From Macrostomum lignano (taxonomy: Eukaryota): a DNA stretch of 64,000 bases. The translations under genes and the position numbers were made by a program. The stretch's first letter is position 1; each line of letters begins with the position of its first letter. A model generated the notes under the pieces. The model had not been told where the DNA came from and searched no databases. It worked only from the letters and a program-made list of their open reading frames with translations. Shown in pieces: positions 10,352 to 55,785 of the stretch. The stretch covers positions 310,001 through 374,000 of the forward strand of contig NIVC01000326.1 of NCBI GenBank assembly GCA_002269645.1. Direction: 5' to 3'.

Positions 10352-10373
10352 TAGTAGTAGTAGCAGTAGTAGC

Positions 10374-10432
<59 letters not shown>

Positions 10433-10433
10433 C

Positions 10434-10489
<56 letters not shown>

Positions 10490-10490
10490 C

Positions 10491-10537
<47 letters not shown>

Positions 10538-10538
10538 C

Positions 10539-10579
<41 letters not shown>

Positions 10580-10589
10580 CAGTAGTAGC

Positions 10590-10651
<62 letters not shown>

Positions 10652-10718
10652 CTGTAGTAGTAGTAGTAGCAGTAGTAGTAACAGTAGTAGTAGTAGTAGT
10701 ATTAGTAGTAGTAGTAGC

Positions 10719-10753
<35 letters not shown>

Positions 10754-10754
10754 C

Positions 10755-10792
<38 letters not shown>

Positions 10793-10832
10793 CTGTAGTA
10801 GTAGTAGTAGCAGTAGTAGTAGTAGTAGTAGC

Positions 10833-10921
<89 letters not shown>

Positions 10922-10999
10922 CTGTAGTAGTAGTAGTAGCTGTAGTAGTAGTAGTAGTAGTATTAGTAGTAGTAGTTGCAGTAGTAGTAGTATAGTAGC

Positions 11000-11037
<38 letters not shown>

Positions 11038-11038
11038 C

Positions 11039-11098
<60 letters not shown>

Positions 11099-11121
11099 TG
11101 CAGTAGTAGTAGTATAGTAGC

Positions 11122-11165
<44 letters not shown>

Positions 11166-11179
11166 CAGTAGTAGTAGTG

Positions 11180-11252
<73 letters not shown>

Positions 11253-11337
11253 CTGTAGTAGTAGCAGTAGTAGTAACAGTAGTAGTAGTAGTAGTATTAG
11301 TAGTAGTAGTAGCAGTAGTAGTAGTAGTAGTAGTAGC

Positions 11338-11369
<32 letters not shown>

Positions 11370-11397
11370 CAGTAGTAGTAGTAGTAGTAGTAGTAGC

Positions 11398-11444
<47 letters not shown>

Positions 11445-11445
11445 C

Positions 11446-11507
<62 letters not shown>

Positions 11508-11551
11508 CAGTAGTAGTAGTAGTAGTAGCAGTAGCAGTAGTAGTAGTAGTA
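10352..11551. repeat. (AGT)n microsatellite, 1.2 kb
   Basis: Imperfect AGT run with AGC interruptions. Confidence 0.99.
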
Positions 11552-12257
11552 TCTAGATAATAGTAATAGTAGTTAGTACAGCAGCCCTAAACCTCCTAAT
11601 CATCAGGCATGCACACTCTCTTGTGCCTCTGTGGCTGGTGAATTGCACAACAAAAACCCACTGGCCAATTTTCTCGAACAAGCCCCAAATTATTGTGGCC
11701 GCGTACGCAGAATCGAACCAGGGGTCAGGGAGGCAGCAGCAGCAGCAGCAGCAGCAGCACAATTAGCGGCGGTAACCGCAACAGAAGCAGCAGAACACAC
11801 AAACAGCCAAGGCAGATCCCAGCGAGCCAGTATCTGTCGGTGTCTGTATAATTTCTTGCCTTCTTGAACCTTCCAGCCCAGAATCTGCAGATGTCGTCAG
11901 ACGCAGTCCCGATAATTGGCTGCGGCAACTTGCTGCAACCAAGGAACTGGCTGACATGCGGGGCCTGATTTATGGCACCCGGCAGGGGGTCGCGGCGGGG
12001 AAGGAGGAGCCGGCGGAGGCGCCGCAAACACCGGCCTGAATGCAGCGAGGGCCCAGCAGCTGCAGTGTGCCAGCACCCCCACCCCCCACCCCCAGTCATC
12101 TCGGGTTTATCAGTGCTGAACACTGCGGCCAACTTCGGGCGTTTTCAAGTCTGTGACTGAAGCACTTTGCGGAGGAGATGCACAGGGAGCTGAACTCAGA
12201 TGAACTGAGATTTTGGATAGAGATTTGGTTGACAAATTGACTTTTGATTTAAATTAG

Positions 12258-12676: not shown

Positions 12677-12701
12677 GGGCAGGCAGGCAGGCAGGCAGGC
12701 A

Positions 12702-14029
12702 GGCACACAGACGGATGGCACAGACACACAGACAGACACAGACGGATGGCACAGACACACAGACAGACACACAGACGGATGGCACAGACACACAGACAGG
12801 CAGACAGACGGATGGCACAGACACACAGACAGACACACAGACGGATGGCACAGACACACAGACAGACACACAGACGGATGGCACAGACACACAGACAGAC
12901 ACAGACGGATGGCACAGACACACAGACAGACACAGACGGATGGCACAGACACACAGACAGACACACAGACGGATGGCACAGACACACAGACAGACACACA
13001 GACGGATGGCACAGACACACAGACAGACACACAGACGGATGGCACAGACACACAGACAGACACAGACGGATGGCACAGACACACAGACAGACACAGACGG
13101 ATGGCACAGACACACAGACAGACACACAGACGGATGGCACAGACACACAGACAGACACAGACGGATGGCACAGACACACAGACAGACACAGACGGATGGC
13201 ACAGACACACAGACAGACACACAGACGGATGGCACAGACACACAGACAGACACAGACGGATGGCACAGACACACAGACAGACACACAGACGGATGGCGCA
13301 GACACACAGACAGGCAGACAGACGGATGGCACAGACACACAGACAGGCAGACAGACGGATGGCACAGACACACAGACAGACACACAGACGGATGGCACAG
13401 ACACACAGACAGGCACACAGACGGATGGCACAGACACACAGACAGGCACACAGACGGATGGCACAGACACACAGACAGACACACAGACGGATGGCAGACA
13501 CACAGACAGGCACACAGACGGATGGCACAGACACACAGACAGACACACAGACGGATGGCACAGACACACAGACAGACACACAGACGGATGGCACAGACAC
13601 ACAGACAGACACACAGACGGATGGCACAGACACACAGACAGACACACAGACGGATGGCACAGACACACAGACAGACACACAGACGGATGGCAGACACACA
13701 GACGGATGGCACAGACACACAGACAGGCACACAGACGGATGGCACAGACACACAGACAGACACACAGACGGATGGCACAGACACACAGACAGACACACAG
13801 ACAGACACACAGACGGATGGCACAGACACACAGACGGATGGCAGACACACAGACAGACACACAGACGGATGGCACAGACACACAGACAGACACACAGACG
13901 GATGGCACAGACACACAGACAGGCAGACAGACGGATGGCACAGACACACAGACAGACACACAGACGGATGGCACAGACACACAGACAGGCAGACAGACGG
14001 ATGGCACAGACACACAGACAGACACACAG
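12702..14029. repeat. ~31-33 bp CACAGACGGATGG minisatellite
   Basis: Unit acggatggcacagacacacagacagacacacag with length variants. Confidence 0.97.
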
Positions 14030-14134
14030 AGGACATCAGAGCACAGAAGCAGTGCAGGCAGAGCCGGAGAAGCCAGTGATCAGATCAGGGTGGCAGAGGC
14101 AAACACCGCAGTTCGAGTCCGAATTCGAAATGGA

Positions 14135-15540: not shown

Positions 15541-16172
15541 CCCCAAATCCCCATGAATTCATCAATACAGATCCCAAATCCCCATGAATACACATCCCAA
15601 ATCCTCATGAATACAGATCTCAAATCCCCATGAATACAGATCTCAAATCCCCATGAATTCAGATCCCAAATCCCCATGAATACAGATCCCAAATCCCCAT
15701 GAATACAGATCTCAAATCCCCATGAATACAGATCTCAAATCCCCATGAATTCAGATCCCAAATCCCCATGAATACAGATCTCAAATCCCCATGAATACAG
15801 ATCTCAAATCCCCATGAATTCAGATCCCAAATCCCCATGAATACACATCCCAAATCCTCATGAATACAGATCTCAAATCCCCATGAATACAGATCTCAAA
15901 TCTCCATGAATTCAGATCCCAAATCCCCATGAATACAGATCCCAAATCCCCATGAATACACATCCCGAATCCCCATGAACACAGATCCCAAATCCCCATG
16001 AACACAGATCCCGAATCCCCATGAACACAGATCCCGAATCCCCATGAACACAGATCCCAAATCCCCATGAACACAGATCCCGAATCCCCATGAATTCAGA
16101 TCCCAAATCCCCATGAACACAGATCCCAAATACTCATGAATACAGATCCCAAATCCCCATGAATACAGATCG
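15541..16172. repeat. 23-bp minisatellite
   Basis: Unit atacagatcccaaatccccatga. Confidence 0.97.
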
Positions 16173-16225
16173 CCAAACACTCGGGCATTTTTATACATTG
16201 AAGTCCTGACAAATTGAGATCCCAA

Positions 16226-17806
16226 TCATCTTTGCCTGTGCCGGGAAGCCGCTGCCGCAGCCATGGGTTCAATGTCGGAGTCGTCGCTGTCGCTGGGTGG
16301 CACTCGGTCGTCACCGCCTGCGGCGGCAGCTCTGTCCTCGCCTTCTCCGGCGTTCTCGCTCAGTACAACATATTCGCGCGAACTGTACCCGAATTTAAGT
16401 ACGTCGCGTTCTTTTAATTCAATATAACGCCGAGCTTCGACGCGCTCGCCGTTGAGGTAGGTGCCGTTGGCGGACTCCAGGTCGATGATGTACGGCTTCA
16501 CCAGCCGCGACTTGCTGCCGTCCGGCTGCTCCAACTCCACCAGCCGGTACTGCAGGGCCGCGTGCTGCTTGGAGATGGACGGGTGGTCCAGCGGGATGTC
16601 GGCCACCTTGCGGTCCCTGCCGATCAGGTAGCCGCTCTGCCGGTGCACGTACAGCGGCTTCATGGCCTCCTCGCCCTGAGGTGGGTGGGGAAAGGGGAAT
16701 TTAGTGAGGATCTGGGATGATCCGGGTTTTGGTTTAGGAATATGGTGGCTTATATTATCTCTATTGATGATCTGAAAGGTTTCAATTTTCTGGCCTGAGG
16801 ATCAGGGAGGCTGGCCCAGCAACTGACACTCTGGGAGGCTGGCCCAGCAACTGACACTCTGGAATGCTGGCCCAGCAACTGACACTCTGAAAGGCTGGCC
16901 CAGCAACTGGGGATCTGGGAGGCTGGTCCAGCAACTGAGGAACTGGGAGGCTGGCCCAGCAACTGACACTCTGAAAGGCTGGCCCAGCAACTGAGGATAT
17001 GGGAGGCTGGTTCAGCAACTGAGGATCTGGGAGGCTGGCTCAGCAACTGGGGATCTGGGAGGCTGGCCCAGCAACTGAGAATCTGGGAGGCTGGCCAAGC
17101 AACTGAGGATCTGGGAGGCTGGGGCCAGCAACTGGGGATCTGGGAGGCTGGGCCCAGCAACTGAGGATCTGGGAGGCTGGGGCCAGCAACTGGGGATGTG
17201 GGAGTCCCAGTGCACCCCAGCAGCCCTCACCTTGAACGGATAGAGTCGCCAGCGCTTCTTGGGCATGCGGGCGTTGGCGGGCTCGCTGTACTTGATGAGC
17301 ACACCCTTGTACATGTTGGTGTCCTCGGCCAGCTTGCCGGAGAGCCCCATGTTGGCCATCTGCTTGGGTGGCGGCGGCGGCTTTTTCTCGTCGGGCTCTT
17401 CGCCGGTTTCAGATTTCACTCGCTGCTGGTCTGGGCGGCCCCACTCGAACCGCTGCTGCTGCTGGCGATGCTCGCGACGGCCGCGGCCTCTGCCACCGCC
17501 GCCGCCGCCCCTGCGCTCCCGACGGGTGTCAAAGCGGTCAGCAGACCGAGAGCGCGATCGCTCCCTTCGTCGCGGCTGGTCTTCGTCGCGCTGCTGACTG
17601 TGCCGATGGTGCTCGCGGCGTCGGGCATCCCGGTCCCGATGGTCCCGCTGAACCCGATCAGCGTCGCGTTGGTCGCCAGCATCGTCAGGCCGATGCTGGT
17701 GGCGGCGGTGGTGGTGGCTGTCGGAGTCGCCGTGTCGCCTCGGCCGCCGGTCCGTGTCGTCGAGTTCGCGGTGGCGGCTGGCCTGGAGTGGATCGAGTTC
17801 GGCAGA
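16226..17806 (-). CDS. SNIP1: Smad nuclear-interacting protein 1 / Pml1 (RES complex), FHA domain
   Basis: Exons 17806-17231 (192 codons) and 16675-16226 (150 codons including stop), joined by a phase-0 intron. It contains the SNIP1 motif GKLAEDTN..KGVLIKYSEPANARMPKKRWRLYPFK and the FHA sequence YLIGRDRKVADIPLDHPSISKQHAALQYR...YIIDLESANGTYLNG. The N-terminal region is Arg/Asp/His-rich. No in-frame ATG was found upstream. Confidence 0.92.
16798..17200. repeat. 28-bp minisatellite in the SNIP1 intron
   Basis: Unit gggaggctggcccagcaactgaggatct. Confidence 0.95.
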
Positions 17807-19356
17807 CTGGGGATTTGGGAAGAATCTTGCCCGATCCCAAACTATTCTAGTCAGTTACCAAGGGCCTCTTGCGCCACAATCAGGCGGCTTAGTTTGCTTT
17901 CCAATAAAGAACTATTTGCTTGAATGATTTACTATGGAACATAATTTTAGCCATTTTGTAACAATAAAATTCTATGGCCAAAAGTTATACATGATAAGGA
18001 AGCCAATAGCAAAATAAGTTATAAAAATGAAGCCACTCCTAAAAGCACAAAAAGACAACAGAATGGAAATAAGCAGAAGAGGCTATCAGAGCAATAAGAG
18101 CCTTTTATACAGATGCATTTTTCATTTTAAAAAGTTATATGAAGAGGTTGCAATTAGGGATTGCAATCAAATGATTATAGGACTGGGCTCTTAAATCCAT
18201 ATTTAAGCTCATAAATCCCAAGACAAAACTATGTTTCTTCCATAACAAATGCAAAAAAACTGAATTCATATATCATTTTATTTCCTATATTCTATATGCT
18301 TCATTAATGCTTAATACTTTGCTAAACTCTATAAATTGTCTTGCTACCATTGATTTCTTTATGAATTTTTAGGTTGGACTATAAATTAATAAATTATTAG
18401 GACAAAAAAGCTATTTCAAAACAAATATTATTGTCAAAATTGTAATTGTAAGACCATAGAAATAAAGAAATTGACAAACTCATCATAAGATTTTAAATTG
18501 TAGATTAATTAAAAGCTAAAAAGTTGATTTATTTGTATTTTATAATTCTAAGAGAAAAATGCTTAGGTTAGGTATAGCTTTTATTAAGATTTAAAATTTT
18601 GATTCAGAAACTTAAAAATCTTTTTTATCCCAAGATTAGCTAATCTTAAGCTAATCTAAACTAATTCAAACTTTAAAGAATTAGACTATAAAATCTAGGA
18701 TATACTAGATATTTAGGCCTATCAATTGTTCATTTCATTTTTTTCAAACATGGTATAATAAGTAAATTTTCCTTTTCATATTATAATTTTTATAGGATTG
18801 TAACTTATATTATATCATATTTCATTGTCTTGATGTTGATCTATGACTATATTTTTTTCAACATTAAAATAGCCTAGGACAGGGGGCCTATTTGTTGCAT
18901 AGGAAATTTTGCAATAATATACATAAGTCCCATATATAAATTAGCAGCCAAGTAGGATTCTATGAGGAGATTACATTATTTACATTATTTATTTACAATT
19001 TACATTAAACTTGGCTAGTTAAACTACTTAGTTTTAGTTAGATATTATAAATATAATGCATTTGGAATGGAAAACATTAAACAATATAAAACAATAATTA
19101 AAGAGGTCTTGAATTTAAATACATTTTATATGCTAATAAAAAGATTTATTATTTTATACTCAAACTGAGTCAAAGGTGTTTGATATTAGCTGGATATTAT
19201 TTTCTAAAATGACTAAGGTTCAAGACTAAAGACACAGGAGTAGATCTAGGATGGGCTGAGGGCAGAGAGTGCATACCCATTAGAATTGCACATTACAGAT
19301 ATAAGATTCCATTTAATGTCAGATTGCCAGTGTTACAGTGTACTAATGATAATGTA

Positions 19357-19531
19357 CATGGGCAGCTTGCGGCACCAAGGCACGTGCCCCCCCCCCCAGA
19401 AAATGAGTCCACGTGATAATTTTTTGTGTTCTTTTCTGATTTTATGCCCTAATTAGCAACTTATAAAGGTACCTGTGCCCCCTTGCCCTGTGCCTGGTGC
19501 CCCCCTCAAATATTAGGCTCCGCTGCCCCTG
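19357..19531. mobile_element. 175-bp non-autonomous hAT-type DNA element (MITE)
   Basis: 10-bp TIRs CA(T/G)GGGCAGC and an 8-bp target-site duplication ataatgta/ctaatgta (7/8 match). An 8-bp TSD with a CAG-starting TIR is typical of hAT elements. Confidence 0.7.
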
Positions 19532-22500
19532 CTAATGTACTTCCATAGAAAATAGGCAAGTTATATAATTTTATTGTGCTGCGTGTGCCACCCCTCTCAT
19601 AAAACTTTAAGTCTATTGTAATTTTTGTGTGGCGCACACTACTAGTTCTAAAATTGCACGTAACTGTGCAACTTTTCAATTGTACTGCTCATTGACATTG
19701 CATTGCTGGAACTTAAACTTTGTAATTTAAATTATCTAGATCGCTACTAAATTGTCAAAGCAAATCAAAGTCACACAGTTCACTCATTTACATGATTTAT
19801 ACATATATCGGGTAAATCTCAAATTGAAATATACGTAAGTTATAAACAAATTTTTTCTTTCAGCATGAATTTAATTGTTAAACCAGAAGTATTTGTACAT
19901 AAATTTAACTTTTATTTATAAAAAACTGATTGAAAAATGTGTCTTTAAACTTTTAGCCAGAGCTTATGCTTTTATCGTGGCGATAGCGACCGAAAACGTA
20001 TTTTTCTGACTTGTACTTTAAGTACGTTTTTTGTTTCATAACGCTCTTTTGTGTACGTGTACTATTTTTGTCTATGGGACAATGACTGAAAATATAGGGG
20101 AAAACCTTTATCTGTGAGCTTGTGGATATTTTACGGCTGTGTTTTCAATATTTATGAACTTATTTAGCCCTGTCTTAATTGCATGACACTTGTCTACTGT
20201 TGAAAAATTCCTGTAAGGTGTAGGTTTTCTGATAAACAAGGCCAAACATTTTGATCTTTAGTGATTCATTCTTTCAGAGACATTTTAAATATTGTTATTT
20301 TGTTTTATCTGCGACTGTCAATGCATTGTTACTTACTTATGCCTATTGATGTTACATTTTGACTTTTTTCATGAGCACAAAATTTCCTGTAAGGTGTAAG
20401 TTTACTCAGCTCATAAGCATGTAAATGTTCCCAAAACTTGTTATTATGTAGAAAAATACTAAACAAAGAGTAGTTTTTTATTGCATGTTCTTGTGATTTT
20501 ACTAAAGAAGTATAGACCTTATTAAGTTCATTATATGGGTTTTTACCATTTATAGCCAACTAACATACTTAAGTAAGCAGTTTGTTTATTTTTGTATGAA
20601 AATCTTTGATGAATTCGCTTGTAATGATATTCAATTTTGATCTTATGTGTATATTTTGAGCTCTAATGTTTGGTAATCCATAGAAATATTCTAATTTGTT
20701 TTTGCCAATGTATTTAATATATTCCTCTAATGTTATCATATTTGAATGCCTATTTGGGCTAGCAAAAGACAATAGGTATGGCAGGAACAGGAACCCTTAG
20801 AAACAGTTTGCATGGTTAGGAGAAAGCAAAAAGAATCCTGGTATTGCATACTTTTATTGTATTTAATGACACCTTAGAAAGCCTTTTTACTCATAATTAG
20901 GAAGCACAATCTATCTACTTCTATTTGTATTTATATCTCAATATCTGTGTGTAGCAGTATATGTTTACCTTGCAATTTGAATGCCATATCTATTATTTCT
21001 ATTTAGTCATTTTCAATTGTACTCTGCTATCTTGGTATTCATTTACAAAAATACAAAGTGAGAGTCTATCTGTCTATTTGTAAATTTTGGCAATTTTCAA
21101 TGTAGACATTCCTAAAATTACTACAGTTATTTTCTTTAAATTGATACCAGATAACATTAAGATGATAATACCTCATTCTTATATCGTTTCTATTTTCTAC
21201 AATACACAAATTTACTTCAAAAGTTCAAAATTCATTTCTTGTCTGGAATAAAAGTGGATATTGCATGATAATAGAATATATTTATATGTATCTCTATAGT
21301 ACAGTGCAAGAAGGGAGTGTTGGCCATGATGGCATAGCAGTCATGAGGGTAGAAAGAATTGCTGGGCTGGGCCAATGCCAAATGCCACACATGCACATTG
21401 TTTCACATGTGCACTGTGTAGTTACAGTGTTGGGCATAAAAACTAACACATCTATGTAAGAGTTTGAAATCCTATATACTGTATTTGTACTGTCAGTTGC
21501 ATCTTATCCTGGCCTGTACATCTGTTGCTTTCTCTTAGCATACTGTATTACCTTTCTCTCAGCATATATATGTTTTAGTTTCCAGTTTAACATTTGCCAT
21601 TTGCCATTTACATTTTTCTTAGTTTTCAGTGCCATATCTGCTTTATATAGTATTTTTCAGTCTGTAAGTTTTCTGTTTTTTTTCTTTTTGCCAGTATCTT
21701 TTTGGCTTTTATTTACTGTTGTACATTTTCCCAGTGCGAGTAACTGTACGCTTTTAATTTCATTGCATTTTTATGGTCTGCACTTCTTTATATAAGTCCA
21801 GTGCAGTTCAAGTATCTGTTTCAGTCTGTTTTTTCTTGCACATTTTAAAGTAGAAATGGGAAATACACATGCAATTTTTTGTTTTGCTTTAATTTACAAA
21901 CAAACATCTACATTCTACAGACGATATATTTGATCAGTGATGGAAACCTTAGTCAAAACTTCAAAAGTAAAATGTATAAGTATATTTTTTAACTTCTAGC
22001 TTTTTAGCAGTATGAGAGAACAGCAGCTTCGAGTTCTTTGTCAAGAAATTAAGGGAAAGTATTGGTGTTATTTTTGTGGTATGGCTTGCAATTTGATAGT
22101 TGCAAAACTTGATTCAGTTGAATTAAAGAGACAAACGTGTAATTTAAAGAAAATTCAATACATTTGCTTAATTAAAATATGTTCAAGTTGAATACTAGAT
22201 CCATGATCCATCGGTGTCAGTCTGAATATTACAGAATTTGTAGGTTTCGCCATATTAAATTTTAGTAAAGATAAATAACCCAATTGGCATCGTTTCATTG
22301 CCATCAATAATAAACTCCGGTCGTTATCAGTCCGTCAACGGGATATGTTGTCGATATATATATAAAAAATGGTTTAGGTACCGTATATTCCGTTTATATT
22401 AAATCAGGCAGATTCTTAGCACGTTAAATTAAGTAACTATAAACAGCCTCAATTTATAACAAAATGTTTCTTAAAAACAAAGAATATTTGTGTATACTAC

Positions 22501-23847
22501 AAACCAATAGAAATTTAACTCTAAAAAAACAAAAACTACAATTTTGTATGTTAAATAAACAAACAGTTTATCTTCGGTATTAATCGTTGTCAGAATACCC
22601 TTCGAAAAAACAAACAGAATTCTTTCTTGAAATTCAGGCCTACTTGTGGTTTTAAGTAGAAAAATTATTATATTATTGTTTAATCTTCAGAGGTAAAGCA
22701 TTATTTTGCATGCCACAGAACTTTTATTTTTTGTCAATTTTTTTACTTCTGTGTTTGAGATTTACCCTATCGCGCAACTTAGACTTCCGAATTCGAAACG
22801 GAGGCTGAGATTCCAAGAAACATAAGTGAAAAGAAACAAATTCTATCCGCAGGAGTAATGTTATTTTAGACTGGTGAGTCCCATACTTCTCTAGCAAGTA
22901 GCTGGTGTTGCAATTACAAAACTAATTTATTACTCGTAATTCCAGAAGTCAGCATTTTGTTTGAGCATTCACGGATAAGCTGCTTTTCCACCACTTTTCA
23001 CATCAATTTAAGAACCAGAGTCAGTTCGGATCGGATCTTTGAAGAAAAAAACCGTGTAACTGTTTTAATTTGCTGAATTTTTGACTGCGTTATCAGGCTC
23101 ACTTTGCACAATTATTTACTTTCTTGGCTATTCCCATTCAATAGTAAAAACTTTATGGCACGTATATATCCCTTTAGTTTATGAGAAAAAAGTTATACTT
23201 CACAAATTGGATCTGGTTCTAGAACCAGAACAAGCACTATGAAAGGGCCCCATACTGTTAATGTACAAATAAATATTTTTACAGTTCTAATTATCAAAGT
23301 AATCCAGTTTTTTCTTCTGGGATTCAATACTATAGTCCAGTTCAGCCAAAACTTACGATATTCACGTACATTAAAGTACGAGTAACATGCATGCATTTAT
23401 ATTTGCATGTAGCATCCAAGGACTACTCTAGTAGAATGACAGGAAATTACGTTTCTTGAAAATTTTAGGAGGCAGTTTTTACCTAAAAATACATTATGGA
23501 GATAGGTTTTCTTTTTTAAACAGAAAATTTTTGGTTTTTGATGGGAGACAGACCCTATGCTTATTTTTGATGTGTTGCCTTCCCTATCGCTCTATTGATC
23601 TCATAAAGTTTTTCATCTATAAAAGTACGATTCTATGTTAATTTTATATCCTAGGTACATGTTTTCTTTTCTTTTCTAACGTAGCCATCAGTAATGAAAC
23701 AATTACATGCGTAATGTTACGCATTCATGTAGACATGTAGAAAGAGTAAACAAAGGACGCATTTATATTTTCAGCAGGAGCATATAAATGTAACAGTGGC
23801 ATATTATTCGCACAGCAACGTTAATGTACAACATTGCAGCCCAAAGC

Positions 23848-25905
23848 TCAGAGCACAAACGGTATAAGGGCCCGTCTGTCAGCAGGGAAGCTGCTGCCAA
23901 ACTGCCGCCTGTACCACGCGTGCGAGAGCAGGGCGCTGGCCGACTGGTTCACCAGGACAAACAGCAGCAGGTGAAACAGCAGCCCGCCACCCCCGCCGCC
24001 GCTGCCGCTGACGAGGCAAAACAAATTCAGGTAGATAAGCATCTCCAGGTTGTAATGGGGCGACGACAGGTAGCGGAACAGGTGACCCTGCGGCAGCAGA
24101 TGCTTGCGGTGAATCACGGCGCCTAGAGGAAAAAATTACAAGCATTAAAACCGAGTTTTAAGAAGACAAGAAGCTTAATGAAATGAGGATTTGGGAAGAT
24201 AAACAGATTAGGGAAACAGGGATTTCGGGAATACAAACAGATTAGGGAAATGGGGATTCGGGAAGATAAACAGATTAGGGAAATGGGGATTCGGGAAGAT
24301 AAACAGATTAGGGAAATGGGGATTCGGGAATATAAACAGATTTAGGAAAATGGGGATTTGTTAAGATAAACAGATTAGGAAAATGGGGATTTGGGAATAC
24401 AAACAGATTAGGGAAATTAGGGATTTGGGAATATAAACAGATTAGGGAAATGGGGATTTGGGAAGATAAACAGCTGAGGGAACAGCTGCTCCGGCATTGA
24501 GATCGGACAGAAGAGAACGCACTGCACAGGCCACACAGTCAAACAGAAGCACCAGAAATCTCCCACCTTTTCCGTCCTTCCTCAACGCGGCGAGAGTCTG
24601 GGCCGCCTTAAACTGACCCCAGGCCAGCAGTGCGTGAACGGCAGAGTGAGCGATAGCTTGCGCCAAGCTGATCCTGTACTCTGCCATCGGCAATTCAAAT
24701 ATTCGATGAAATTTTCATTCTTATAAAGATATCTACGCAACATATCGGCAAATTGACTCGCCTGGCAGCCGGAGCAGCAGCGACCAGACAACGCAGCAGT
24801 AGAATCCGTAGCCCAGCCCGTAGTGCAGCAGGTTGATGCTGCCGCTAGAGTAGACCGACACCAGCCGGCACTCCAGCAGGCGGCGAAGCATCTGGCAGGC
24901 TTGCAGGACCAGCGGGGTGAAGCTCAGCCAGGGTGCCGCGGACACTGCGGAGTTCGGCAGGTAGTTGCTGGAGCAGCTGATGACTCATGGCTACTCCTGC
25001 TAAACCAGCATCTGTATCACTCTCACCCATCTCACTCTCAGCCCTGCTACTCTCACCCATCTCACTCTCACCCCTGCCACTCTCACCACTGCCACTCTCA
25101 CCCATCTCACTCTCACCCCTGCCACTCTCACCACTGCCACTCTCACCCATCTCACTCTCACCCCTGCCACTCTCACCACTGCCACTCTCACCCATCTTAC
25201 TCTCACCCATCTCACTCTCACCCCTGCTACTCTCCCCCATCTCACTCTCACCCCTGCCACTCTCACCACTGCCACTCTCACCCATCTCACTCTCACCTAT
25301 CTAACTCTCACCCATCTCACTATCACCCTTGCCACTCTCACCAATCTCTCTCACCACTGCCACTCTCATCTATCTCACTCTCACCACTACAACTCACATC
25401 ACTGCCACTCTCACCCCTGCCACTCTCACCACTGCTACTCTGACCCATCTCACTCTCACTCATCTCACTCTCACCCCAATTTCACCACATCCCACCTCAT
25501 CTCACCTTAATATCACCCCAAATCTCATGCCATCTCACCTCAATCCCACCCCAGTCTCACCCTCCCCAGACACGCACCATCCGGCAGGCCCAGCGGTGCG
25601 GCCAGGCAGCCGCCCAGCCAGCCCGCAGGCCAGCTGGCGGCCCAGAGCAGGCAGGCGCAGCAGGCCAGGCCGGCCAGGTAGAAATGCCAGAAGTGCTGCT
25701 TCGGCAGCTCCAGCAGCTGCACTGCAGTCCAGGCCCGGCCGGCCGGCCGAACTTTGCCGAACTGCAGGGCGTCTCGGAGCAGCTGCGGCAGCCGTGTGGG
25801 GCTCAGCAGCTCCAGGCTCGCCATCAGCCCGATGACCACAGTGAACGCGTCCACAATCAAGGACAGCCAGGCCTCCAGACTACTGGCCGAGTCGCTAGTA
25901 GCCAT
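23848..25905 (-). CDS. SRD5A3: Polyprenol (polyprenal) reductase, steroid 5-alpha-reductase family (SRD5A3/DFG10)
   Basis: Exons 25905-25578, 24944-24762, 24680-24567 and 24122-23848, all joined in phase 1. Motifs are FGK...LPKQHFWHFY, RRLLECRLVSVYS...HYGLGYGFY, LAALRK, and LPQGHLFRYLSSPHYNLEMLIY...NQSASALLSHAWYRRQF...RRALIPFVL*. Confidence 0.9.
24195..24472. repeat. ~32-bp minisatellite in SRD5A3 intron 3
   Basis: Unit ggggattcgggaagataaacagattagggaaat. Confidence 0.93.
25020..25560. repeat. 15-bp CACTCTCACC minisatellite in SRD5A3 intron 1
   Basis: Units cactctcacccatct / cactctcacccctgc. Confidence 0.95.
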
Positions 25906-27369
25906 GGCAACAGAGCAGCGCGAGTGTTTGCGTGGTGCAGCTGCGAGGATGAACCGCCAAAAGTTTCAATCTTTTGAGGCCAATATTTTGCAGGAAAAAT
26001 GACCCCCCTGACCTCACCTCGATGACTCCCTAAATTGCTGTAACACAGAAGACAAAGACTACTAAAAGTACACTGATAGAGAAGCACTTTAGCTTCTAAG
26101 AAAACGTTTTTTGAAGGCCTACGTTTCTTGCGAAAAAACAAATGTTACTATCTTGTAAAAGTGGAAATTCAACAGGAAATCGTTTCTAAGAAATTGAGAG
26201 ATCGAATGCCGGTTTTGAACAAAGGAGAGACAGGAATTTCTGCATTCCAGATTTTTACTGTTTTTGAAAATATGAAATAAACATGTGCAACAAAAACTCG
26301 CATTTTTTACCGGGACAAAAAAGAAATTCCAATTTGGTTTGTTTTTATTGTATATTTGTTTGCAACACAGGCAAAACAGAGAAGCAGGCCTTAAACCTGC
26401 TGCTTGAGTTCATTTACTGTAGTTGACTTTCTTGCAGTTCAGTCAGTGTAGAAAACAGAAAGCAGAAGAGAATAAAGAGAGAGTGGGAGAGTGGGATTTG
26501 GTGTAGCGAAATTCAATATATTTGTTAATTAAATAATCATCTCTGGATAAGCGCAATGGCACAACCTGCATAAAGCCAGTAATAGCATTTTAATAAACGA
26601 ATAAATAAGCAATAAATCATTCAGATTTTAACAAAAGTAAGAAAACACTTTCCAAACTAAGCATTAGCGCATGCATTTTGTATATATAATCTAAATATAT
26701 ATTGATGCGCAAATGATACTACTAGCGAGTAAGTAGCCAGACGCAGGTTTAACAAATATTTTTGCTAATACAAACGTAAAGTTTACAAATTATATAATTA
26801 AAATATTTTGACTAATCAAAAACATAAATAAAGCTTTGTCCACAGAATGACTTTGGTCCAACCGATAACAAAGCAAATGAGTAGTGTTTCTACACAAGCC
26901 AAACTGGGACTCCACCTTCAGGACGATTATTAGCTAATTTAGTAAAACAAATCAAAAACAAAACAAGTTCGCGAATGGCAAAATAAGCTTATTAAAAATG
27001 AGTTGGCAGGTTATATTGGGTCTCTGCCGCGAGAGCCGCGGCCCGCGGGCGCTTCAGCGGCCGCAGGCTCAGAGGAAAGGAAAAACGCGCATTGAACGAA
27101 AGCAGACAAAGATTGCAGCGATTGTGCAGCTTCCAGCAGCTTCCAGCAGCCCCAGTGCGGTTTGTTGATCAACCAGTCTACTCGGTGACAAATTTACACT
27201 GACCGATATTGCAAATTATAGCTATCCATTTATTGTGTGTACTCAATACAGTGATTATCGATAATGAAATATGATTAATATCAGACCGATATTCAAACTT
27301 AATTATAAATATCATAAACCAATTGTAATAAAGTTGAAGCACTGATATCTATATCCAATCATAAATCTC

Positions 27370-30800: not shown

Positions 30801-33800
30801 TGAGAGGCATGAGGATCAGAGGATTTGAGAGCCATGGGGATCAGAGGATTTGAGAGCCATGGGGATCAGAGGATTTGAGAGCCATGGGGATCAGAGGATT
30901 AGAGGCATGGGGATCAGAGGATTTGAGAGGCATCGGGATCAGAGGATTAGAGAGGCATGGGGATCAGAGGATTAGAGCCATGGGGATCAGAGGATTAGAG
31001 AGGCATGGGGATCAGAGGATTAGAGCCATGGGGATCAGAGGATTTGAGAGCCATGGGGATCAGAGGATTTGAGAGCCATGGGGATCAGAGGATTTGAGAG
31101 CCATGGGGATCAGAGGATTTGAGAGGCATGGGGATCAGAGGATTTGAGAGGCATGGGGATCAGAGGATTATAGAGCCACGGGGATCAGAGGATTAGAGAG
31201 CCATGGGGATGAGAGGATTCGAGAGCCATGGGGATCAGAGGATTTGAGAGGCATGGGGATGAGAGGATTTGAGAGGCATGGGGATCAGAGGATTTGAGAG
31301 GCATGGGGATCAGAGGATTTGAGAGGCATGGGGATGAGAGGATTTGAGAGGCATGGGGATCAGAGGATTTGAGAGCCATGGGGATCAGAGGATTAGAGAG
31401 CCATGGGGATCAGAGGATTAGAGAGGCATGGGGATCAGAGGATTAGAGAGCCATGGGGATCAGAGGATTAGAGATGCATGGGGAGCAGAGGATTAGAGAC
31501 CTAATAAGGATTAGAGGTCTAATGAGACTCATAGCATTAAAGGCCTGGAATCAAAGATATGAGCAGGCTTGGAATGATTAAATTACAATTCGCAACAGGG
31601 ATCAAGCCTACCTAAGCTCCACATGAGCGCTCCGTACACCCGCATGAGCTGTTGCGAGTCTATCATATCGGCTTTGTTGAGCACAATCCGAATCTTATCC
31701 TCGTAGCCCTTCATGCTCTCGATGACGGCCTTGAACTCGTCAGAGATGTCCAGCTTGTGCGCGTCGAACAGCAGGACGATCCGGTCAACCCGGGCGGCGA
31801 ACCATTCGATCACCTCGTTCATGGAGTAGCCGCGGTCCACCCGCTGCTTCTCGCCTAAGGTGTGCCGGTTTAATAGTAGTCCATGAAGCAGGTCATTCAC
31901 TGGGTTATACAGTGATCCATGGAGCAGGTATACACTGGGTCATGCAGTGATCTATGAAGCAGGTAATACACTGGGTCATGCAGTGATCCATGAAGCAGGT
32001 ATACACTGGGTCATGCAGTGATCCATGAAGCAGGTATACACTGGGTCATGCAGTGATCTATGAAGGTCATACACTGGGTCATGCAGTGATCCATGAAGCA
32101 GGTCATACACTGGGTCATACAGTGGTCCATGAAGCAGTTCATATACTGGGTCATAGTGGTTCATGCTGTAGGTCATACACGGATCATACAGTGGTTCATG
32201 AATGTCATACACTGGGTCATATAGTGCTTCATGGAGCAGGTCATACACTGGGTCATGCAGTGAACTATGAAGCAGGTAATACACTGGGTCATGCAGTGAT
32301 CCATGAAGAATGTAATACACTGGGTCATGCAGTGATCCATGAAGCAGGTAATACACTGGGTCATGCAGTGATCTATGAAGCATGTAATACACTGGGTCAT
32401 GCAGTGATCTATGAAGCATGTAATACACTGGGTCATGCAGTGATCCATGAAGCATGCAATACACTGGGTCATGCAGTGATCCATGAAGCATGTAATACAC
32501 TGGGTCATGCAGTGATCTATGAAGGTCATACACTGGGTCATGCAGTGATCCATGAAGCATGTAATACACTGGGTCATGCAGTGATCTATGAAGCATGTAA
32601 TACACTGGGTCATGCAGTGATCTATGAAGCATGTAATACACTGGGTCATGCAGTGATCCATGAAGCATGTAATACACTGGGTCATGCAGTGATCCATGAA
32701 GCATGTAATACACTGGGTCACGCAGTGATCCATGAAGCATGTAATACACTGGGTCATGCAGTGATCCATGAAGCATGTAATACACTGGGTCATGCAGTGA
32801 TCTATGAAGGTCATACACTGGGTCATGCAGTGATCCATGAAGCAGGTCATACACTGGGTCATGCAGTGATCCATGAAGCAGGTCATACACTCGGTCATGC
32901 AGTGATCCATGAAGCAGTTCCCAAGCCCTTCTCCTTCAGCAGTGACTTACCAGACAAGATCCCGGGAGTATCAATAATAGAAATTGACTTGAGCACTTCG
33001 TTATTGAGAGTTGAGCACTGGAAGCGGTTCAGAAAGGCGTTGCCGAACCGAGACAGCGGCCGGAAGGGCTTCTGGGTGTCCACCACCAGGGCGTTGCCGG
33101 GCACAACTCCCTCGTGCTCATCGTGCATCACGGCAATGAAGCGATCTGTAGTTGGCTCCGGGCCAATCCGAATGCCGGGGAAATCGGTCTCAAGCAGGTA
33201 TTTGATGAAGGTGGTCTTGCCTGTTGAGTACTGACCAACCAGCAGGATCATTGGCTTGCTGCAACAAAAAACCCAGCTCGCAGTAAACATCCACGTTGGT
33301 TTTAGGAATCAAGGACTTCTTTTACGATCATGAATCCCAAAATCTCCCCATTGAGATCGTGAATCCGAAAATCTCCCATTTGTGATTATGACTTCCAAAA
33401 TCTCCCATTTGAGATCATGAATCCCAAAAATCGCCCATTTGAGATTATGAATCCCAAAAAGTCTCTTTTGAGATTATGAATCCCAAAAAGTCTCTTTTGA
33501 GATCATGAATTCCAAAAATCTCCCTATTGAGATCATGAATCCCAAAAATCTCCCATTTGAGATCATGAATCCGAAAAACTCCCATTTGAGATCATGAATC
33601 CGAAAAACTCCCATTTGAGATCATGAATCCCAAAAAATCTCCCCAATAAGATAATGAATCCCAAAAATCTTCCATTTGAGATTATGAATCCCAAAAATAT
33701 CAATGTGAGATTAGAAAAGTCACCCGAATGTCCCTTTGAGAATCAGAACCCCAAATCTCACCAATTCAACTTAAACTTGAAATCTCAAAATCCCCTCCTT

Positions 33801-34050: not shown

Positions 34051-34349
34051 GATGAGCAGCTGATGGTGGTCTAAAAAGCTGCAGATAGAAAGTAAATATA
34101 AATATTTGTTGTCAAACAAGCAACTATTAACCATAGTTTCTACTATGGTCATAATGAAGGTTGATTAAAATTTTTACATGGTTATTTAAAAACTTGACAC
34201 ATATAACTAATGAATATAATAAAAATATGAAAATTTTATCTATAGCATAATAACTTTAAGTAATGAAGTTAAACCCATCGGTCTTACAGACTTATTGGAT
34301 TTTTACCACTCAGTCAACATGAAGAATGTTTACTGTTGTTCAGATAATT

Positions 34350-37300
34350 TTGTGGTGATTTCTGTAGACACATTTCGGCTTTCACTAACTGAGTCTGGGC
34401 ACCCACCTGCCATATTTGAGTCATGTATATATGTCCAGTTACGTAGATAAAAGGCACTTTTAACAGAAATGGCAGAGTTAAATGGACTTTTGGGTGTTCA
34501 GATCGGCTTCTTTGCAAGTACTCCAAATGCATGATAGCATCCAGATCATTTGTGGTGATTTCTGTGGACACATTTCGGCTTTCACTAACTGAGTCTGGGC
34601 ACCCACCTGCCATATTTGAGTCATGTATATATGTCCAGTTACGTAGATAAAAGGCACTTTTAACAGAAATGGCAGAGTTAAATGGACTTTTGGGTGTTCA
34701 GATCGGCTTCTTTGCAAGTACTCCAAATGCATGATAGCATCCAGATCATTTGTGGTGATTTCTGTGGACACATTTCGGCTTTCACTAACTGAGTCTGGGC
34801 ACCCACCTGCCATATTTGAGTCATGTATATATGTCCAGTTACGTAGATAAAAGGCACTTTTAACAGAAATGGCAGAGTTAAATGGACTTTTGGGTGTTCA
34901 GATCGGCTTCTTTGCAAGTACTCCAAATGCATGATAGCATCCAGATCATTTGTGGTGATTTCTGTGGACACATTTCGGCTTTCACTAACTGAGTCTGGGC
35001 ACCCACCTGCTATATTTGAGTCATGTATATATGTCCAGTTACGTAGATAAAAGGCACTTTTAACAGAAATGGCAGAGTTAAATGGACTTTTGGGTGTTCA
35101 GATCGGCTTCTTTGCAAGTACTCCAAATGCATGATAGCATCCAGATCATTTGTGGTGATTTCTGTGGACACATTTCGGCTTTCACTAACTGAGTCTGGGC
35201 ACCCACCTGCCATATTTGAGTCATGTATATATGTCCAGTTACGTAGATAAAAGGCACTTTTAACAGAAATGGCAGAGTTAAATGGACTTTTGGGTGTTCA
35301 GATCGGCTTCTTTGCAAGTACTCCAAATGCATGATAGCATCCAGATCATTTGTGGTGATTTCTGTGGACACATTTCGGCTTTCACTAACTGAGTCTGGGC
35401 ACCCACCTGCCATATTTGAGTCATGTATATATGTCCAGTTACGTAGATAAAAGGCACTTTTAACAGAAATGGCAGAGTTAAATGGACTTTTGGGTGTTCA
35501 GATCGGCTTCTTTGCAAGTACTCCAAATGCATGATAGCATCCAGATCATTTGTGGTGATTTCTGTGGACACATTTCGGCTTTCACTAACTGAGTCTGGGC
35601 ACCCACCTGCCATATTTGAGTCATGTATATATGTCCAGTTACGTAGATAAAAGGCACTTTTAACAGAAATGGCAGAGTTAAATGGACTTTTGGGTGTTCA
35701 GATCGGCTTCTTTGCAAGTACTCCAAATGCATGATAGCATCCAGATCATTTGTGGTGATTTCTGTGGACACATTTCGGCTTTCACTAACTGAGTCTGGGC
35801 ACCCACCTGCCATATTTGAGTCATGTATATATGTCCAGTTACGTAGATAAAAGGCACTTTTAACAGAAATGGCAGAGTTAAATGGACTTTTGGGTGTTCA
35901 GATCGGCTTCTTTGCAAGTACTCCAAATGCATGATAGCATCCAGATCATTTGTGGTGATTTCTGTGGACACATTTCGGCTTTCACTAACTGAGTCTGGGC
36001 ACCCACCTGCCATATTTGAGTCATGTATATATGTCCAGTTACGTAGATAAAAGGCACTTTTAACAGAAATGGCAGAGTTAAATGGACTTTTGGGTGTTCA
36101 GATCGGCTTCTTTGCAAGTACTCCAAATGCATGATAGCATCCAGATCATTTGTGGTGATTTCTGTGGACACATTTCGGCTTTCACTAACTGAGTCTGGGC
36201 ACCCACCTGCCATATTTGAGTCATGTATATATGTCCAGTTACGTAGATAAAAGGCACTTTTAACAGAAATGGCAGAGTTAAATGGACTTTTGGGTGTTCA
36301 GATCGGCTTCTTTGCAAGTACTCCAAATGCATGATAGCATCCAGATCATTTGTGGTGATTTCTGTGGACACATTTCGGCTTTCACTAACTGAGTCTGGGC
36401 ACCCACCTGCCATATTTGAGTCATGTATATATGTCCAGTTACGTAGATAAAAGGCACTTTTAACAGAAATGGCAGAGTTAAATGGACTTTTGGGTGTTCA
36501 GATCGGCTTCTTTGCAAGTACTCCAAATGCATGATAGCATCCAGATCATTTGTGGTGATTTCTGTGGACACATTTCGGCTTTCACTAACTGAGTCTGGGC
36601 ACCCACCTGCCATATTTGAGTCATGTATATATGTCCAGTTACGTAGATAAAAGGCACTTTTAACAGAAATGGCAGAGTTAAATGGACTTTTGGGTGTTCA
36701 GATCGGCTTCTTTGCAAGTACTCCAAATGCATGATAGCATCCAGATCATTTGTGGTGATTTCTGTGGACACATTTCGGCTTTCACTAACTGAGTCTGGGC
36801 ACCCACCTGCCATATTTGAGTCATGTATATATGTCCAGTTACGTAGATAAAAGGCACTTTTAACAGAAATGGCAGAGTTAAATGGACTTTTGGGTGTTCA
36901 GATCGGCTTCTTTGCAAGTACTCCAAATGCATGATAGCATCCAGATCATTTGTGGTGATTTCTGTGGACACATTTCGGCTTTCACTAACTGAGTCTGGGC
37001 ACCCACCTGCCATATTTGAGTCATGTATATATGTCCAGTTACGTAGATAAAAGGCACTTTTAACAGAAATGGCAGAGTTAAATGGACTTTTGGGTGTTCA
37101 GATCGGCTTCTTTGCAAGTACTCCAAATGCATGATAGCATCCAGATCATTTGTGGTGATTTCTGTGGACACATTTCGGCTTTCACTAACTGAGTCTGGGC
37201 ACCCACCTGCCATATTTGAGTCATGTATATATGTCCAGTTACGTAGATAAAAGGCACTTTTAACAGAAATGGCAGAGTTAAATGGACTTTTGGGTGTTCA

Positions 37301-54867: not shown

Positions 54868-55785
<918 letters not shown>

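What the first reader, a model, noticed from the sequence alone, without database searches (positions are those of the whole stretch)
17790..17860. SNIP1 has no genomic start codon: the initiator Met may come from the spliced leader
The SNIP1 frame runs open from 17806 but hits an in-frame TAA upstream with no ATG. At 17807 there is a pyrimidine-rich acceptor (ttcttcccaaatccccag|TCT GCC GAA) in phase 0. Platyhelminth spliced leaders end in AUG, which is known to be usable as the initiator. SL addition here would give M-S-A-E-L-D-P..., a 342-aa SNIP1. The adjacent upstream DNA is CpG-free decayed sequence with no obvious coding exon.
Basis: partly seen in the sequence, partly recalled or inferred. 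Interest (0 to 1): 0.7.

Follow-up and report, generated by a model that had tools for sequence, protein, structure and literature searches.

The report
SNIP1 start codon from spliced leader
This flatworm (Macrostomum lignano) SNIP1 gene has no start codon of its own and almost certainly gets its AUG from the trans-spliced leader, a mechanism already documented in flatworms, so it is a clean example and an annotation fix, not a new phenomenon.

Summary
On the minus strand, a two-exon SNIP1 gene (FHA domain) runs open from 17806. An in-frame TAA lies 17 codons upstream (17857-17855), with no ATG between. The first in-frame genomic ATG is codon 151, downstream of a conserved SNIP1 motif. The window is Macrostomum lignano scaffold NIVC01000326.1. 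All four genomic copies share this ATG-less 5' end.

The published M. lignano spliced leader (SL) ends in ATG. An RNA-seq contig from a diverged congener starts with the last 22 nt of that SL, joined directly and in frame to its SNIP1 ORF (…TTGCATG|TCC…). Public M. lignano models start without Met exactly after one of two AG acceptors 24 nt apart: A at 17807|17806 and B at 17783|17782. Both are in phase, giving 342 or 334 aa.

I found no M. lignano read spanning the junction, so trans-splicing of this copy and the choice of acceptor remain inferred.

The mechanism is known (Cheng et al. 2006 in Schistosoma; noted for Macrostomum in 2023). This is a new member of a known kind, of low to moderate interest. 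Its practical value is to show that the GenBank 'partial' and 192-aa models are artefacts of trimming the SL together with its ATG.

The parts
17855..17857 (-). In-frame TAA that closes the SNIP1 frame 17 codons upstream of the exon. There is no ATG between it and 17806.
17807..17826 (-). Acceptor A: pyrimidine tract plus AG (gattcttcccaaatccccAG|). The AG is at 17808-17807. This is outron sequence, removed on SL addition.
   Evidence: 13/18 pyrimidines. UniProt models A0A1I8HPA0 and A0A1I8ICY5 begin exactly after it. It is positionally homologous to the SL junction in L003.
17783..17788 (-). Acceptor B: CTCCAG|, 24 nt downstream and also in phase 0. It is the only exact [T/C]TNCAG match between -300 and M151.
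   Evidence: The GenBank partial CDS of paralogue Mlig026905.g1 starts exactly after it.
17231..17806 (-). Exon 1 (576 nt). It encodes the R/D/H/S-rich N-terminal region, the conserved FEWGRPDQQ motif and the start of the conserved SNIP1 core. It ends ...TTCAAG|gtgagg.
17416..17682 (-). Out-of-frame 88-codon ATG ORF (+1 frame) inside exon 1. Ribosomes that skip the SL AUG would meet this AUG first, and a second out-of-frame AUG before M151.
17357..17359 (-). First in-frame genomic ATG (codon 151 of 342). This is the start used in the 192-aa GenBank models PAA59080.1 and PAA66252.1.
16676..17230 (-). Intron 1 (555 nt, GT...AG), filled mostly by a 28-bp minisatellite (16795-17204).
16226..16675 (-). 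Exon 2: the FHA domain and acidic C-terminus, with the TGA stop at 16228-16226.

Best explanation
The locus is an intact Macrostomum lignano SNIP1 gene. SNIP1 is an FHA-domain spliceosome protein, the orthologue of human SNIP1 and yeast Pml1.

The proposed mechanism runs in four steps:
1. The primary transcript starts somewhere in the AT-rich upstream region.
2. Its 5' part (the outron) is removed by spliced-leader trans-splicing.
3. The 35-nt SL, whose last three bases are AUG, is joined to an AG acceptor at 17807|17806 (A) and/or 17783|17782 (B).
4. Both junctions put the SL AUG in frame as the first AUG of the mRNA. Translation then starts on the SL and yields M-SAELDPLQ-ASRH... (342 aa) or M-ASRH... 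(334 aa).

Shown here:
- No genomic ATG exists between the stop and codon 151.
- The frame relations hold for both acceptors.
- The N-terminal region is conserved and coding.
- The SL ends in ATG.
- A direct, in-frame SL-SNIP1 junction exists in a congener's RNA.

Inferred:
- This M. lignano copy is itself trans-spliced at A and/or B.
- Ribosomes initiate on the SL AUG.
For: 1. Sequence. An in-frame TAA lies at 17857-17855, there is no ATG before codon 151, and two phase-0 AG acceptors are present.

2. Coding sequence extends upstream of M151.
- The motif (Y/F)EWG(K/R) is shared with diverse animal SNIP1 proteins and sits at about residue 121.
- The HMMER alignment to human SNIP1 (5z56_X, E = 1.3e-61) begins at residue 26, although that N-terminal part is low-complexity.
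- Frame 0 is the only stop-free frame of the N-terminal region in both species.
- The N-terminal length difference between the species is 63 nt, which is 21 codons.

3. The SL ends in ATG and is followed by a GTAAG donor. Between 30 and 39% of M. lignano genes are SL trans-spliced (PMC8629364; PMC5730564; PMC5173321).

4. Orthologue transcript L003 (Logan SRR28338164).
- It begins with CGAAGACTCAATTTATTGCATG, the last 22 nt of the SL.
- This is fused to TCCGGC..., with the ATG in frame with a 316-codon SNIP1 ORF. The next in-frame ATG is 132 codons on.
- The orthologue is truly diverged. The conserved block is 85.4% identical at nucleotide level, 50 of its 66 differences are at third codon positions, and 140/151 aa are identical.

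5. Independent annotations stop at the acceptors.
- The WormBase/UniProt models start at SAELDP, after acceptor A.
- GenBank PAA59079.1 starts at ASRHRE, after acceptor B.
- The Mlig_3_7 pipeline trimmed the SL, cut transcripts at SL-read peaks and then ran TransDecoder. For an SL-AUG gene this would yield a '5'-partial' CDS.

6. If the SL AUG were skipped, two out-of-frame AUGs (88- and 70-codon ORFs) precede M151.

7. All four genomic copies share the ATG-less 5' end.

8. The mechanism has precedent in Schistosoma (Cheng et al. 2006).
Against: - I found no M. lignano read or contig spanning SL|TCTGCC or SL|GCCAGC. Exact 'M+' proteins are absent from the protein collection, junction strings are absent from the metagenome contigs, and no supplementary table lists the gene.
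- The two annotations disagree on the acceptor. The GenBank model for this very copy (PAA85461.1) starts 3 nt after acceptor B, not exactly at an AG.
- The SL AUG context is weak at -3 (U). Position +4 is U at acceptor A and G at acceptor B.
- In parasitic flatworms, acceptors are often shared between cis- and trans-splicing (PMC12582326).
- Chance alone gives 75 ATG...GT phase-0 mini-exons in the 6 kb upstream. An additional cis-spliced isoform therefore cannot be excluded from sequence.
Confidence: 0.8

Rival explanations
1. A short cis-spliced 5' exon carrying an ATG lies further upstream and joins acceptor A or B. The start codon is then genomic but unannotated.
For: - Sequence alone cannot exclude it. 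There are 75 chance ATG...GT phase-0 mini-exon candidates in the 6 kb upstream.
- Flatworm acceptors can serve both cis- and trans-splicing (PMC12582326).
- The Met-less models would look the same if a small first exon had been missed.
Against: - The congener's transcript shows the SL, not a cis exon, on the homologous junction.
- Two independent transcript-guided annotations found no upstream exon.
- There is no GC-rich, exon-like island between the acceptor and the next gene 6 kb upstream.
- The TBONE pipeline places 5' ends at SL-read peaks.
Confidence: 0.07
2. The real protein is the 192-aa product initiated at the internal genomic ATG (codon 151), as annotated in PAA59080.1 and PAA66252.1. 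The roughly 450 nt upstream are 5' UTR.
For: - It is the first in-frame genomic ATG, with a reasonable context (AAGCAGATGG).
- GenBank uses it for two copies.
- The FHA core would still be made.
Against: - The conserved EWG motif and the R/D/S-rich region typical of SNIP1 lie upstream of it.
- In the congener that codon is Leu (KQLANMG).
- The upstream frame stays open in both species, with a net length difference of 21 codons.
- The SL AUG and two out-of-frame AUGs precede it.
- The two copies annotated this way carry -2 and -1 nt indels that break the upstream frame, which explains the annotators' choice.
Confidence: 0.07
3. Initiation occurs at a near-cognate non-AUG codon on a transcript that is not trans-spliced, for example the CTG directly after the TAA.
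For: An in-frame CTG follows the TAA (17854-17852). Non-AUG initiation exists in eukaryotes.
Against: - Nothing supports it specifically.
- The 16 codons between the TAA and 17806 overlap a pyrimidine tract and acceptor, and are absent from every protein model.
- The congener's mRNA starts with the SL.
Confidence: 0.03
4. The locus is a 5'-truncated pseudogene or a misassembled copy.
For: M. lignano is a recent polyploid with many duplicated genes. Two of the four copies have frame-breaking indels in exon 1.
Against: - The window copy and L002 are intact over 341 codons. They differ at only 5 of 576 nt in exon 1.
- All four copies share the same 5' end.
- The orthologue shows strong purifying selection.
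- SNIP1 is a conserved spliceosome component, and no other SNIP1 appears in the species' proteome hits.
Confidence: 0.03

Closest known systems
Flatworm SL 3'-terminal AUG used as initiator methionine (Cheng, Cohen, Ndegwa & Davis 2006, J Biol Chem 281:733; Schistosoma mansoni)
   Same: The SL ends in AUG. The acceptor places that AUG in frame with the main ORF. The recipient gene lacks its own in-frame AUG upstream of conserved coding sequence. [quoted passage not shown]
   Different: This is a different species (a free-living macrostomorph) and a different gene. Here translation from the SL AUG is inferred, whereas Cheng et al. tested it experimentally. There are two in-phase acceptors 24 nt apart.
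Macrostomum SL trans-splicing as annotated (Wudarski 2017 PMC5730564; Ustyantsev & Berezikov 2021 PMC8629364; Wiberg et al. 2023 PMC10468722)
   Same: The same 35-nt SL is involved. The acceptor motif [T/C]TNCAG matches acceptor B. [quoted passage not shown]
   Different: In the text and the supplementary files held here, none of these papers reports SNIP1 or quantifies SL-AUG-dependent genes in M. lignano. The annotation pipelines trimmed the ATG and left such genes as 'partial'.
slORFs in nematodes, Oikopleura and trypanosomes (slORFfinder, PMC9851317)
   Same: The start codon is supplied by the trans-spliced leader rather than by the gene.
   Different: Those cases mostly use near-cognate NUG codons inside the SL and often create alternative ORFs. 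Here a canonical AUG at the SL 3' end initiates the main conserved ORF.
Human SNIP1 / Arabidopsis DDL / yeast Pml1 (FHA-domain splicing factors)
   Same: There is an FHA domain (Pfam E = 6e-18) and a conserved pre-FHA segment (SGKLxEDTN...YSEP...RWRLYPFK). The N-terminus is R/D/S-rich. Matches are human SNIP1 at E = 1.3e-61, DDL at E = 5e-47 and Pml1 at E = 4e-9.
   Different: The 120 orthologues listed were not screened for their start codons. The Macrostomum gene has lost its genomic ATG, or never had one.

Membership tests
SL-AUG-initiated flatworm mRNAs (Cheng et al. 2006 class) | The organism's SL ends in AUG and is immediately followed by a GU donor. | tested here: met
   The published M. 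lignano SL is ...TTGCATG followed by GTAAG (PMC8629364; PMC5173321). The same 22-nt SL 3' end is seen on RNA contig L003. No SL RNA gene lies in the window itself, as expected for a trans-acting RNA.
SL-AUG-initiated flatworm mRNAs (Cheng et al. 2006 class) | The mRNA of this gene is SL trans-spliced at an acceptor at the 5' edge of the ORF. | tested here: inconclusive
   This is met for the diverged orthologue, which shows a direct SL|ORF junction. For M. lignano the evidence is only indirect: Met-less public models begin exactly after AG acceptors A or B, and the annotation pipeline cuts at SL-read peaks. No junction-spanning M. lignano read was obtainable.
SL-AUG-initiated flatworm mRNAs (Cheng et al. 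2006 class) | The SL AUG is in frame with the main ORF, with no intervening stop. | tested here: met
   The ORF is 342 codons from acceptor A and 334 from acceptor B. The orthologue has a 316-codon ORF.
SL-AUG-initiated flatworm mRNAs (Cheng et al. 2006 class) | No genomic in-frame AUG lies upstream of conserved coding sequence, so the gene depends on the SL AUG. | tested here: met
   An in-frame TAA lies at 17857-17855. The first in-frame ATG is codon 151, downstream of the conserved EWG motif. The same holds in all four genomic copies.
SL-AUG-initiated flatworm mRNAs (Cheng et al. 2006 class) | Translation actually initiates at the SL AUG (protein N-terminus or initiating ribosomes). | not testable with these tools
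   This needs Ribo-seq, N-terminal proteomics or a reporter assay.
SNIP1 / DDL / Pml1 FHA-domain splicing factors | An FHA domain is preceded by the conserved SNIP1-type segment. | tested here: met
   Pfam FHA PF00498 matches residues 209-289 at E = 6.4e-18. Human SNIP1 (5z56_X) aligns over residues 26-306 at E = 1.3e-61, and Arabidopsis DDL matches at E = 5e-47.
SNIP1 / DDL / Pml1 FHA-domain splicing factors | The gene is the SNIP1 orthologue of its species, not another FHA protein. | tested here: met
   All named top database hits are SNIP1, DDL or unnamed FHA-domain proteins from animals. The only M. lignano proteins listed are this gene's own copies.

The most novel reading that the evidence does not exclude
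SNIP1 is itself a spliceosome component, and in Macrostomum its protein can be made only from trans-spliced mRNA. This dependence is conserved between two species at substantial synonymous divergence. The missing genomic ATG could therefore be a selected feedback device: SNIP1 output would be coupled to the cell's SL trans-splicing capacity, and unprocessed or cis-processed transcripts would be untranslatable. In addition, two in-phase acceptors 24 nt apart could give two N-terminal isoforms (with or without SAELDPLQ).
Probability: 0.08. Interest if true: 0.55.

Novelty: new member of a known kind. Interest (0 to 1): 0.25.

Why it matters
Biologically, this is one more example of a mechanism known since 2006, so it changes no concept. 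It is useful in three ways.

1. It corrects the public record. GenBank PAA85461.1 and PAA59079.1 are labelled 'partial', and PAA59080.1 and PAA66252.1 are truncated 192-aa models. UniProt A0A1I8HPA0 and A0A1I8ICY5 lack a Met. All are explained by trimming the SL together with its ATG.

2. It suggests that other 5'-partial CDSs in the Mlig_3_7 annotation that begin right after an AG could be complete SL-AUG genes. That could be fixed systematically by leaving the ATG on trimmed reads.

3. It shows that SL-AUG dependence of a conserved housekeeping gene persists between Macrostomum species. This bears on how such dependence evolves in a model flatworm where transgenesis could test it.

Tried and rejected
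- Exact look-up of five hypothetical 'M+...' full-length proteins (window copy, paralogue, acceptor-B forms and the L003 ORF) found none in the collection. The gene caller had split or mis-framed these transcripts.
- A homologue search with the N-terminal 150 residues alone returned nothing, not even the 99%-identical P0001. The RD-rich low-complexity query was probably filtered out. That search was wasted.
- Look-up of the out-of-frame 88-aa ORF, as bait for M. lignano RNA contigs, found nothing on record.
- The SL sequence is not present in the window, even with up to 3 mismatches.
- Neither predicted SL-exon junction string occurs in the metagenome contigs.
- P0005/L006, the hit with the highest FHA identity, proved to be a 5'-truncated transcript of another animal with a long in-frame N-terminus. 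It is uninformative about SL use.
- The supplements held for PMC5816591, PMC5730564 and PMC5173321 have no entry for Mlig001447, Mlig026905 or Mlig000036 (the first two papers) or for SNIP1 (all three). PMC8629364 has no supplements held.
- Wasik et al. 2015 is not held, and no paper mentions SRR28338164. The species of L003 is therefore unnamed.
- Rfam and tRNA scans of the window were empty.
- I considered treating 'acceptor in phase 0' as significant and rejected it, because 23 of 38 AGs in the stretch are in phase 0.
- I considered operon membership with the steroid-dehydrogenase gene 6 kb upstream. It cannot be decided, because the published criterion is a repeat-adjusted distance below 1 kb.
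Full report
**What is in the sequence**

The feature lies on the minus strand. Read 5'→3' on that strand, the region is:

...tggTAActgactagaatagtttgggatcgggcaagattcttcccaaatccccAG|TCTGCCGAACTCGATCCACTCCAG|GCCAGCCGCCACCGC...

Translation shows one frame open from just after a TAA, through an R/D/H/S-rich stretch, into a conserved block (…LSGKLAEDTNMYKGVLIKYSEPANARMPKKRWRLYPFK) that ends at a GTGAGG donor. A second exon follows a cccacctcAG acceptor and encodes an FHA domain up to a TGA.

Exact coordinates:

| Feature | Window coordinates (minus strand) |
|---|---|
| In-frame TAA | 17857-17855 |
| Acceptor A, AG | 17808-17807 |
| First base of exon 1 (from acceptor A) | 17806 |
| Exon 1 | 17806-17231 |
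| Intron 1 | 17230-16676 |
| Exon 2, including the stop | 16675-16226 |

The conceptual product is 341 aa, or 342 with an added Met. There is no ATG in the 16 codons between the TAA and 17806. The first in-frame genomic ATG is codon 151, at 17359-17357.

First, a second AG acceptor lies 24 nt downstream (CTCCAG|GCC, first exon base 17782). It is also in phase 0. It is the only exact match to the published M. lignano trans-acceptor motif [T/C]TNCAG between -300 and codon 151.

Second, being 'in phase 0' is weak evidence here. Of the 38 AG dinucleotides in the stretch, 23 are in phase 0, because of CAG and AGC codons.

**Organism and gene identity**

- The best database hit is Macrostomum lignano A0A1I8HPA0, at 99% identity over 341 aa.
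- The 3 kb of the window that I compared (16000-19000) is identical to GenBank scaffold NIVC01000326.1 of assembly GCA_002269645.1.
- The protein has a Pfam FHA domain at residues 209-289 (E = 6e-18).
- It matches human SNIP1 from spliceosome structures (5z56_X, E = 1.3e-61), Arabidopsis DDL and yeast Pml1. It is the SNIP1 orthologue.

**Is the region upstream of codon 151 coding?**

Yes, on four grounds.

- The motif FEWGRPDQQ, at about residue 121, corresponds to the (Y/F)EWG(K/R) motif present in SNIP1 proteins of other animals.
- The HMMER alignment to human SNIP1 starts at residue 26, although that part is low-complexity.
- In M. lignano and in a diverged congener, frame 0 is the only stop-free frame of this region.
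- The two species' N-terminal regions differ in length by 63 nt (21 codons) and share RSRSRSA, GRGRG, QQQQ and EWGRPDQQ.

Translation must therefore begin upstream of any genomic in-frame ATG.

**Not an assembly artefact**

The assembly holds four copies: L001 (the window), L002, L004 and L005.

- Their alignment has no variable column across the 100 nt upstream of acceptor A. All carry the TAA and both acceptors, and none has an ATG.
- L001 and L002 keep exon 1 intact, with 5 differences in 576 nt.
- L004 and L005 carry -2 and -1 nt indels in the GC-rich N-terminal part. These two are the copies GenBank annotates as 192-aa proteins starting at codon 151.

**Where the AUG comes from**

- M. 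lignano has a single 35-nt spliced leader, CGGTCTCTTACTGCGAAGACTCAATTTATTGCATG, followed in the SL RNA gene by a GTAAG donor. [quoted passage not shown]
- Joining this SL to 17806 or to 17782 makes the SL AUG the first AUG of the mRNA, in frame with a 342- or 334-codon ORF.
- If the SL AUG were skipped, the next two AUGs are out of frame (88- and 70-codon ORFs) and precede codon 151.

**The strongest evidence: an orthologue's transcript**

Contig L003 is from run SRR28338164 and is 1,021 nt long. It is spliced at the same intron position, so it derives from RNA.

- It begins with CGAAGACTCAATTTATTGCATG, exactly the last 22 nt of the SL.
- It continues TCCGGCCGT…, and the ATG is in frame with an uninterrupted 316-codon SNIP1 ORF. 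The next in-frame ATG is 132 codons downstream.
- A 5' end that retains only part of the SL is what I would expect of a k-mer-based (de Bruijn) assembly of an SL-bearing mRNA. That is my inference, not a tested point.
- The orthologue is truly diverged. The conserved block is 85.4% identical at nucleotide level, 50 of its 66 differences are at third codon positions, and 140/151 aa are identical.
- No M. lignano protein matches it more closely than the SNIP1 copies do, so it comes from another species that shares the SL.
- Its junction aligns with acceptor A. Both proteins would begin M-S, with 9-10 residues before the S-R-(R)-H-R segment.

**Why the public models look as they do**

The UniProt/WormBase models A0A1I8HPA0 and A0A1I8ICY5 begin, without Met, at SAELDP. 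That is exactly after acceptor A, and 16 codons short of where a simple ORF extension would have ended.

GenBank PAA59079.1 (paralogue L002, labelled 'partial') begins ASRHRE, exactly after acceptor B. PAA85461.1 (this copy, labelled 'partial') begins one codon later.

The Mlig_3_7 pipeline extracted SL-bearing reads, trimmed the SL, mapped the remainder, cut transcripts at the resulting peaks and then ran TransDecoder. Because the ATG was trimmed away with the SL, I infer that a gene depending on the SL AUG would come out as a 5'-partial CDS beginning just after an AG.

Wiberg et al. 2023 left the ATG untrimmed for related annotation reasons. [quoted passage not shown]

**What remains unproven**

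- I could not obtain any M. lignano read or contig spanning the junction, nor a published table listing the gene as trans-spliced.
- Trans-splicing of this particular copy, the choice between acceptors A and B, and initiation on the SL AUG are therefore inferred.
- For acceptor A: it is homologous to the L003 junction, the WormBase models start there, and its pyrimidine tract is slightly better (13/18).
- For acceptor B: it matches the motif exactly, one GenBank model starts there, and it gives a G at +4 of the AUG context.
- A cis-spliced ATG exon cannot be excluded from sequence alone, because 75 chance ATG…GT phase-0 candidates lie in the 6 kb upstream.
- Against a cis exon: no upstream stretch has exon-like composition, the orthologue's transcript shows the SL, and two annotations found no such exon.
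- Whether SNIP1 is the downstream gene of an operon with the same-strand steroid-dehydrogenase gene (window about 23848-25932, 6 kb upstream) cannot be judged. The published criterion is a repeat-adjusted distance below 1 kb.

**Comparison with what is known**

The mechanism is that of Cheng et al. 2006 (J Biol Chem 281:733), as summarised in PMC9851317. All reported flatworm SLs end in AUG. In Schistosoma mansoni this AUG is in frame in 28% of trans-spliced transcripts, and more than 40 cDNAs need it to initiate translation. PMC12582326 restates this across parasitic flatworms.

On the membership tests:

- Met: the SL ends in AUG plus a GU donor; the AUG is in frame; no genomic AUG lies upstream of conserved coding sequence.
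- Met for the orthologue but only indirectly supported for M. lignano: trans-splicing of this mRNA.
- Not testable here: initiation at the SL AUG.

**Verdict**

It is a new example of a known mechanism in a species where that mechanism is already expected. Its main value is to correct the annotation, and it is a convenient test case in a transgenic model flatworm. Interest is 0.25.

Noticed in passing
window 34341-45609: A 200-bp satellite of about 56 head-to-tail copies at 99% identity (TRF score 22452). It explains the constant base composition across 36-44 kb. On the minus strand each pair of units carries an open 139-codon frame, which is probably meaningless.
   Followed up: no
window 16795-17204 (SNIP1 intron 1); L002, L004, L005: The single SNIP1 intron is made almost entirely of a 28-bp minisatellite. 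It is 555 nt in the window copy but about 1,755 nt in the other three genomic copies. This is either array-length variation or an assembly collapse.
   Followed up: partly
L004 (NIVC01002298.1) and L005 (NIVC01001574.1), exon 1: Two of the four SNIP1 copies have -2 and -1 nt indels in the GC-rich N-terminal coding region. That is why GenBank models them as 192-aa proteins from the internal ATG. They are either long-read indel errors or decaying duplicates in this recent polyploid.
   Followed up: partly
window 17860-23800: The 6 kb between SNIP1 and the upstream same-strand steroid-dehydrogenase gene is 27-34% GC and CpG-depleted, with 3 CpG observed against 18 expected in the proximal 1 kb. 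The exons are 59-72% GC. Homology among the four gene copies is continuous for only about 1 kb upstream and then breaks up, which suggests repeat or transposon turnover.
   Followed up: partly
whole window: Tandem-repeat load is very high, with 52 TRF rows at score 200 or more. Examples are (TAG)n at 10352-11578, a 33/163-bp array at 12696-14030, (ATCT)n at 54868-55811 and a 23-bp array running off the window end at 61854-64000. Several produce long spurious ORFs on both strands.
   Followed up: no
P0124 (UniProt A0A1I8ICY5, 399 aa): This M. lignano SNIP1 model shares the Met-less SAELDP start but has a different, longer C-terminus (…AAAAGDDRQVFTPNLRH…). It looks like a frameshifted or read-through or fused model from the older assembly.
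   Followed up: no
P0002: The best non-Macrostomum hit (65% identity) is labelled 'UNVERIFIED_CONTAM' in an Acipenser sinensis assembly, on a 113-kb contig. It may be invertebrate contamination in that fish genome.
   Followed up: no
window 32898-33308 (-): An open frame encoding …GQYSTGKTTFIKYLLETDFPGIRIGPEPTTDRF…. From memory only, this resembles the P-loop segment of an EHD/dynamin-like ATPase, and is presumably an exon of a neighbouring gene. No search was run.
   Followed up: no
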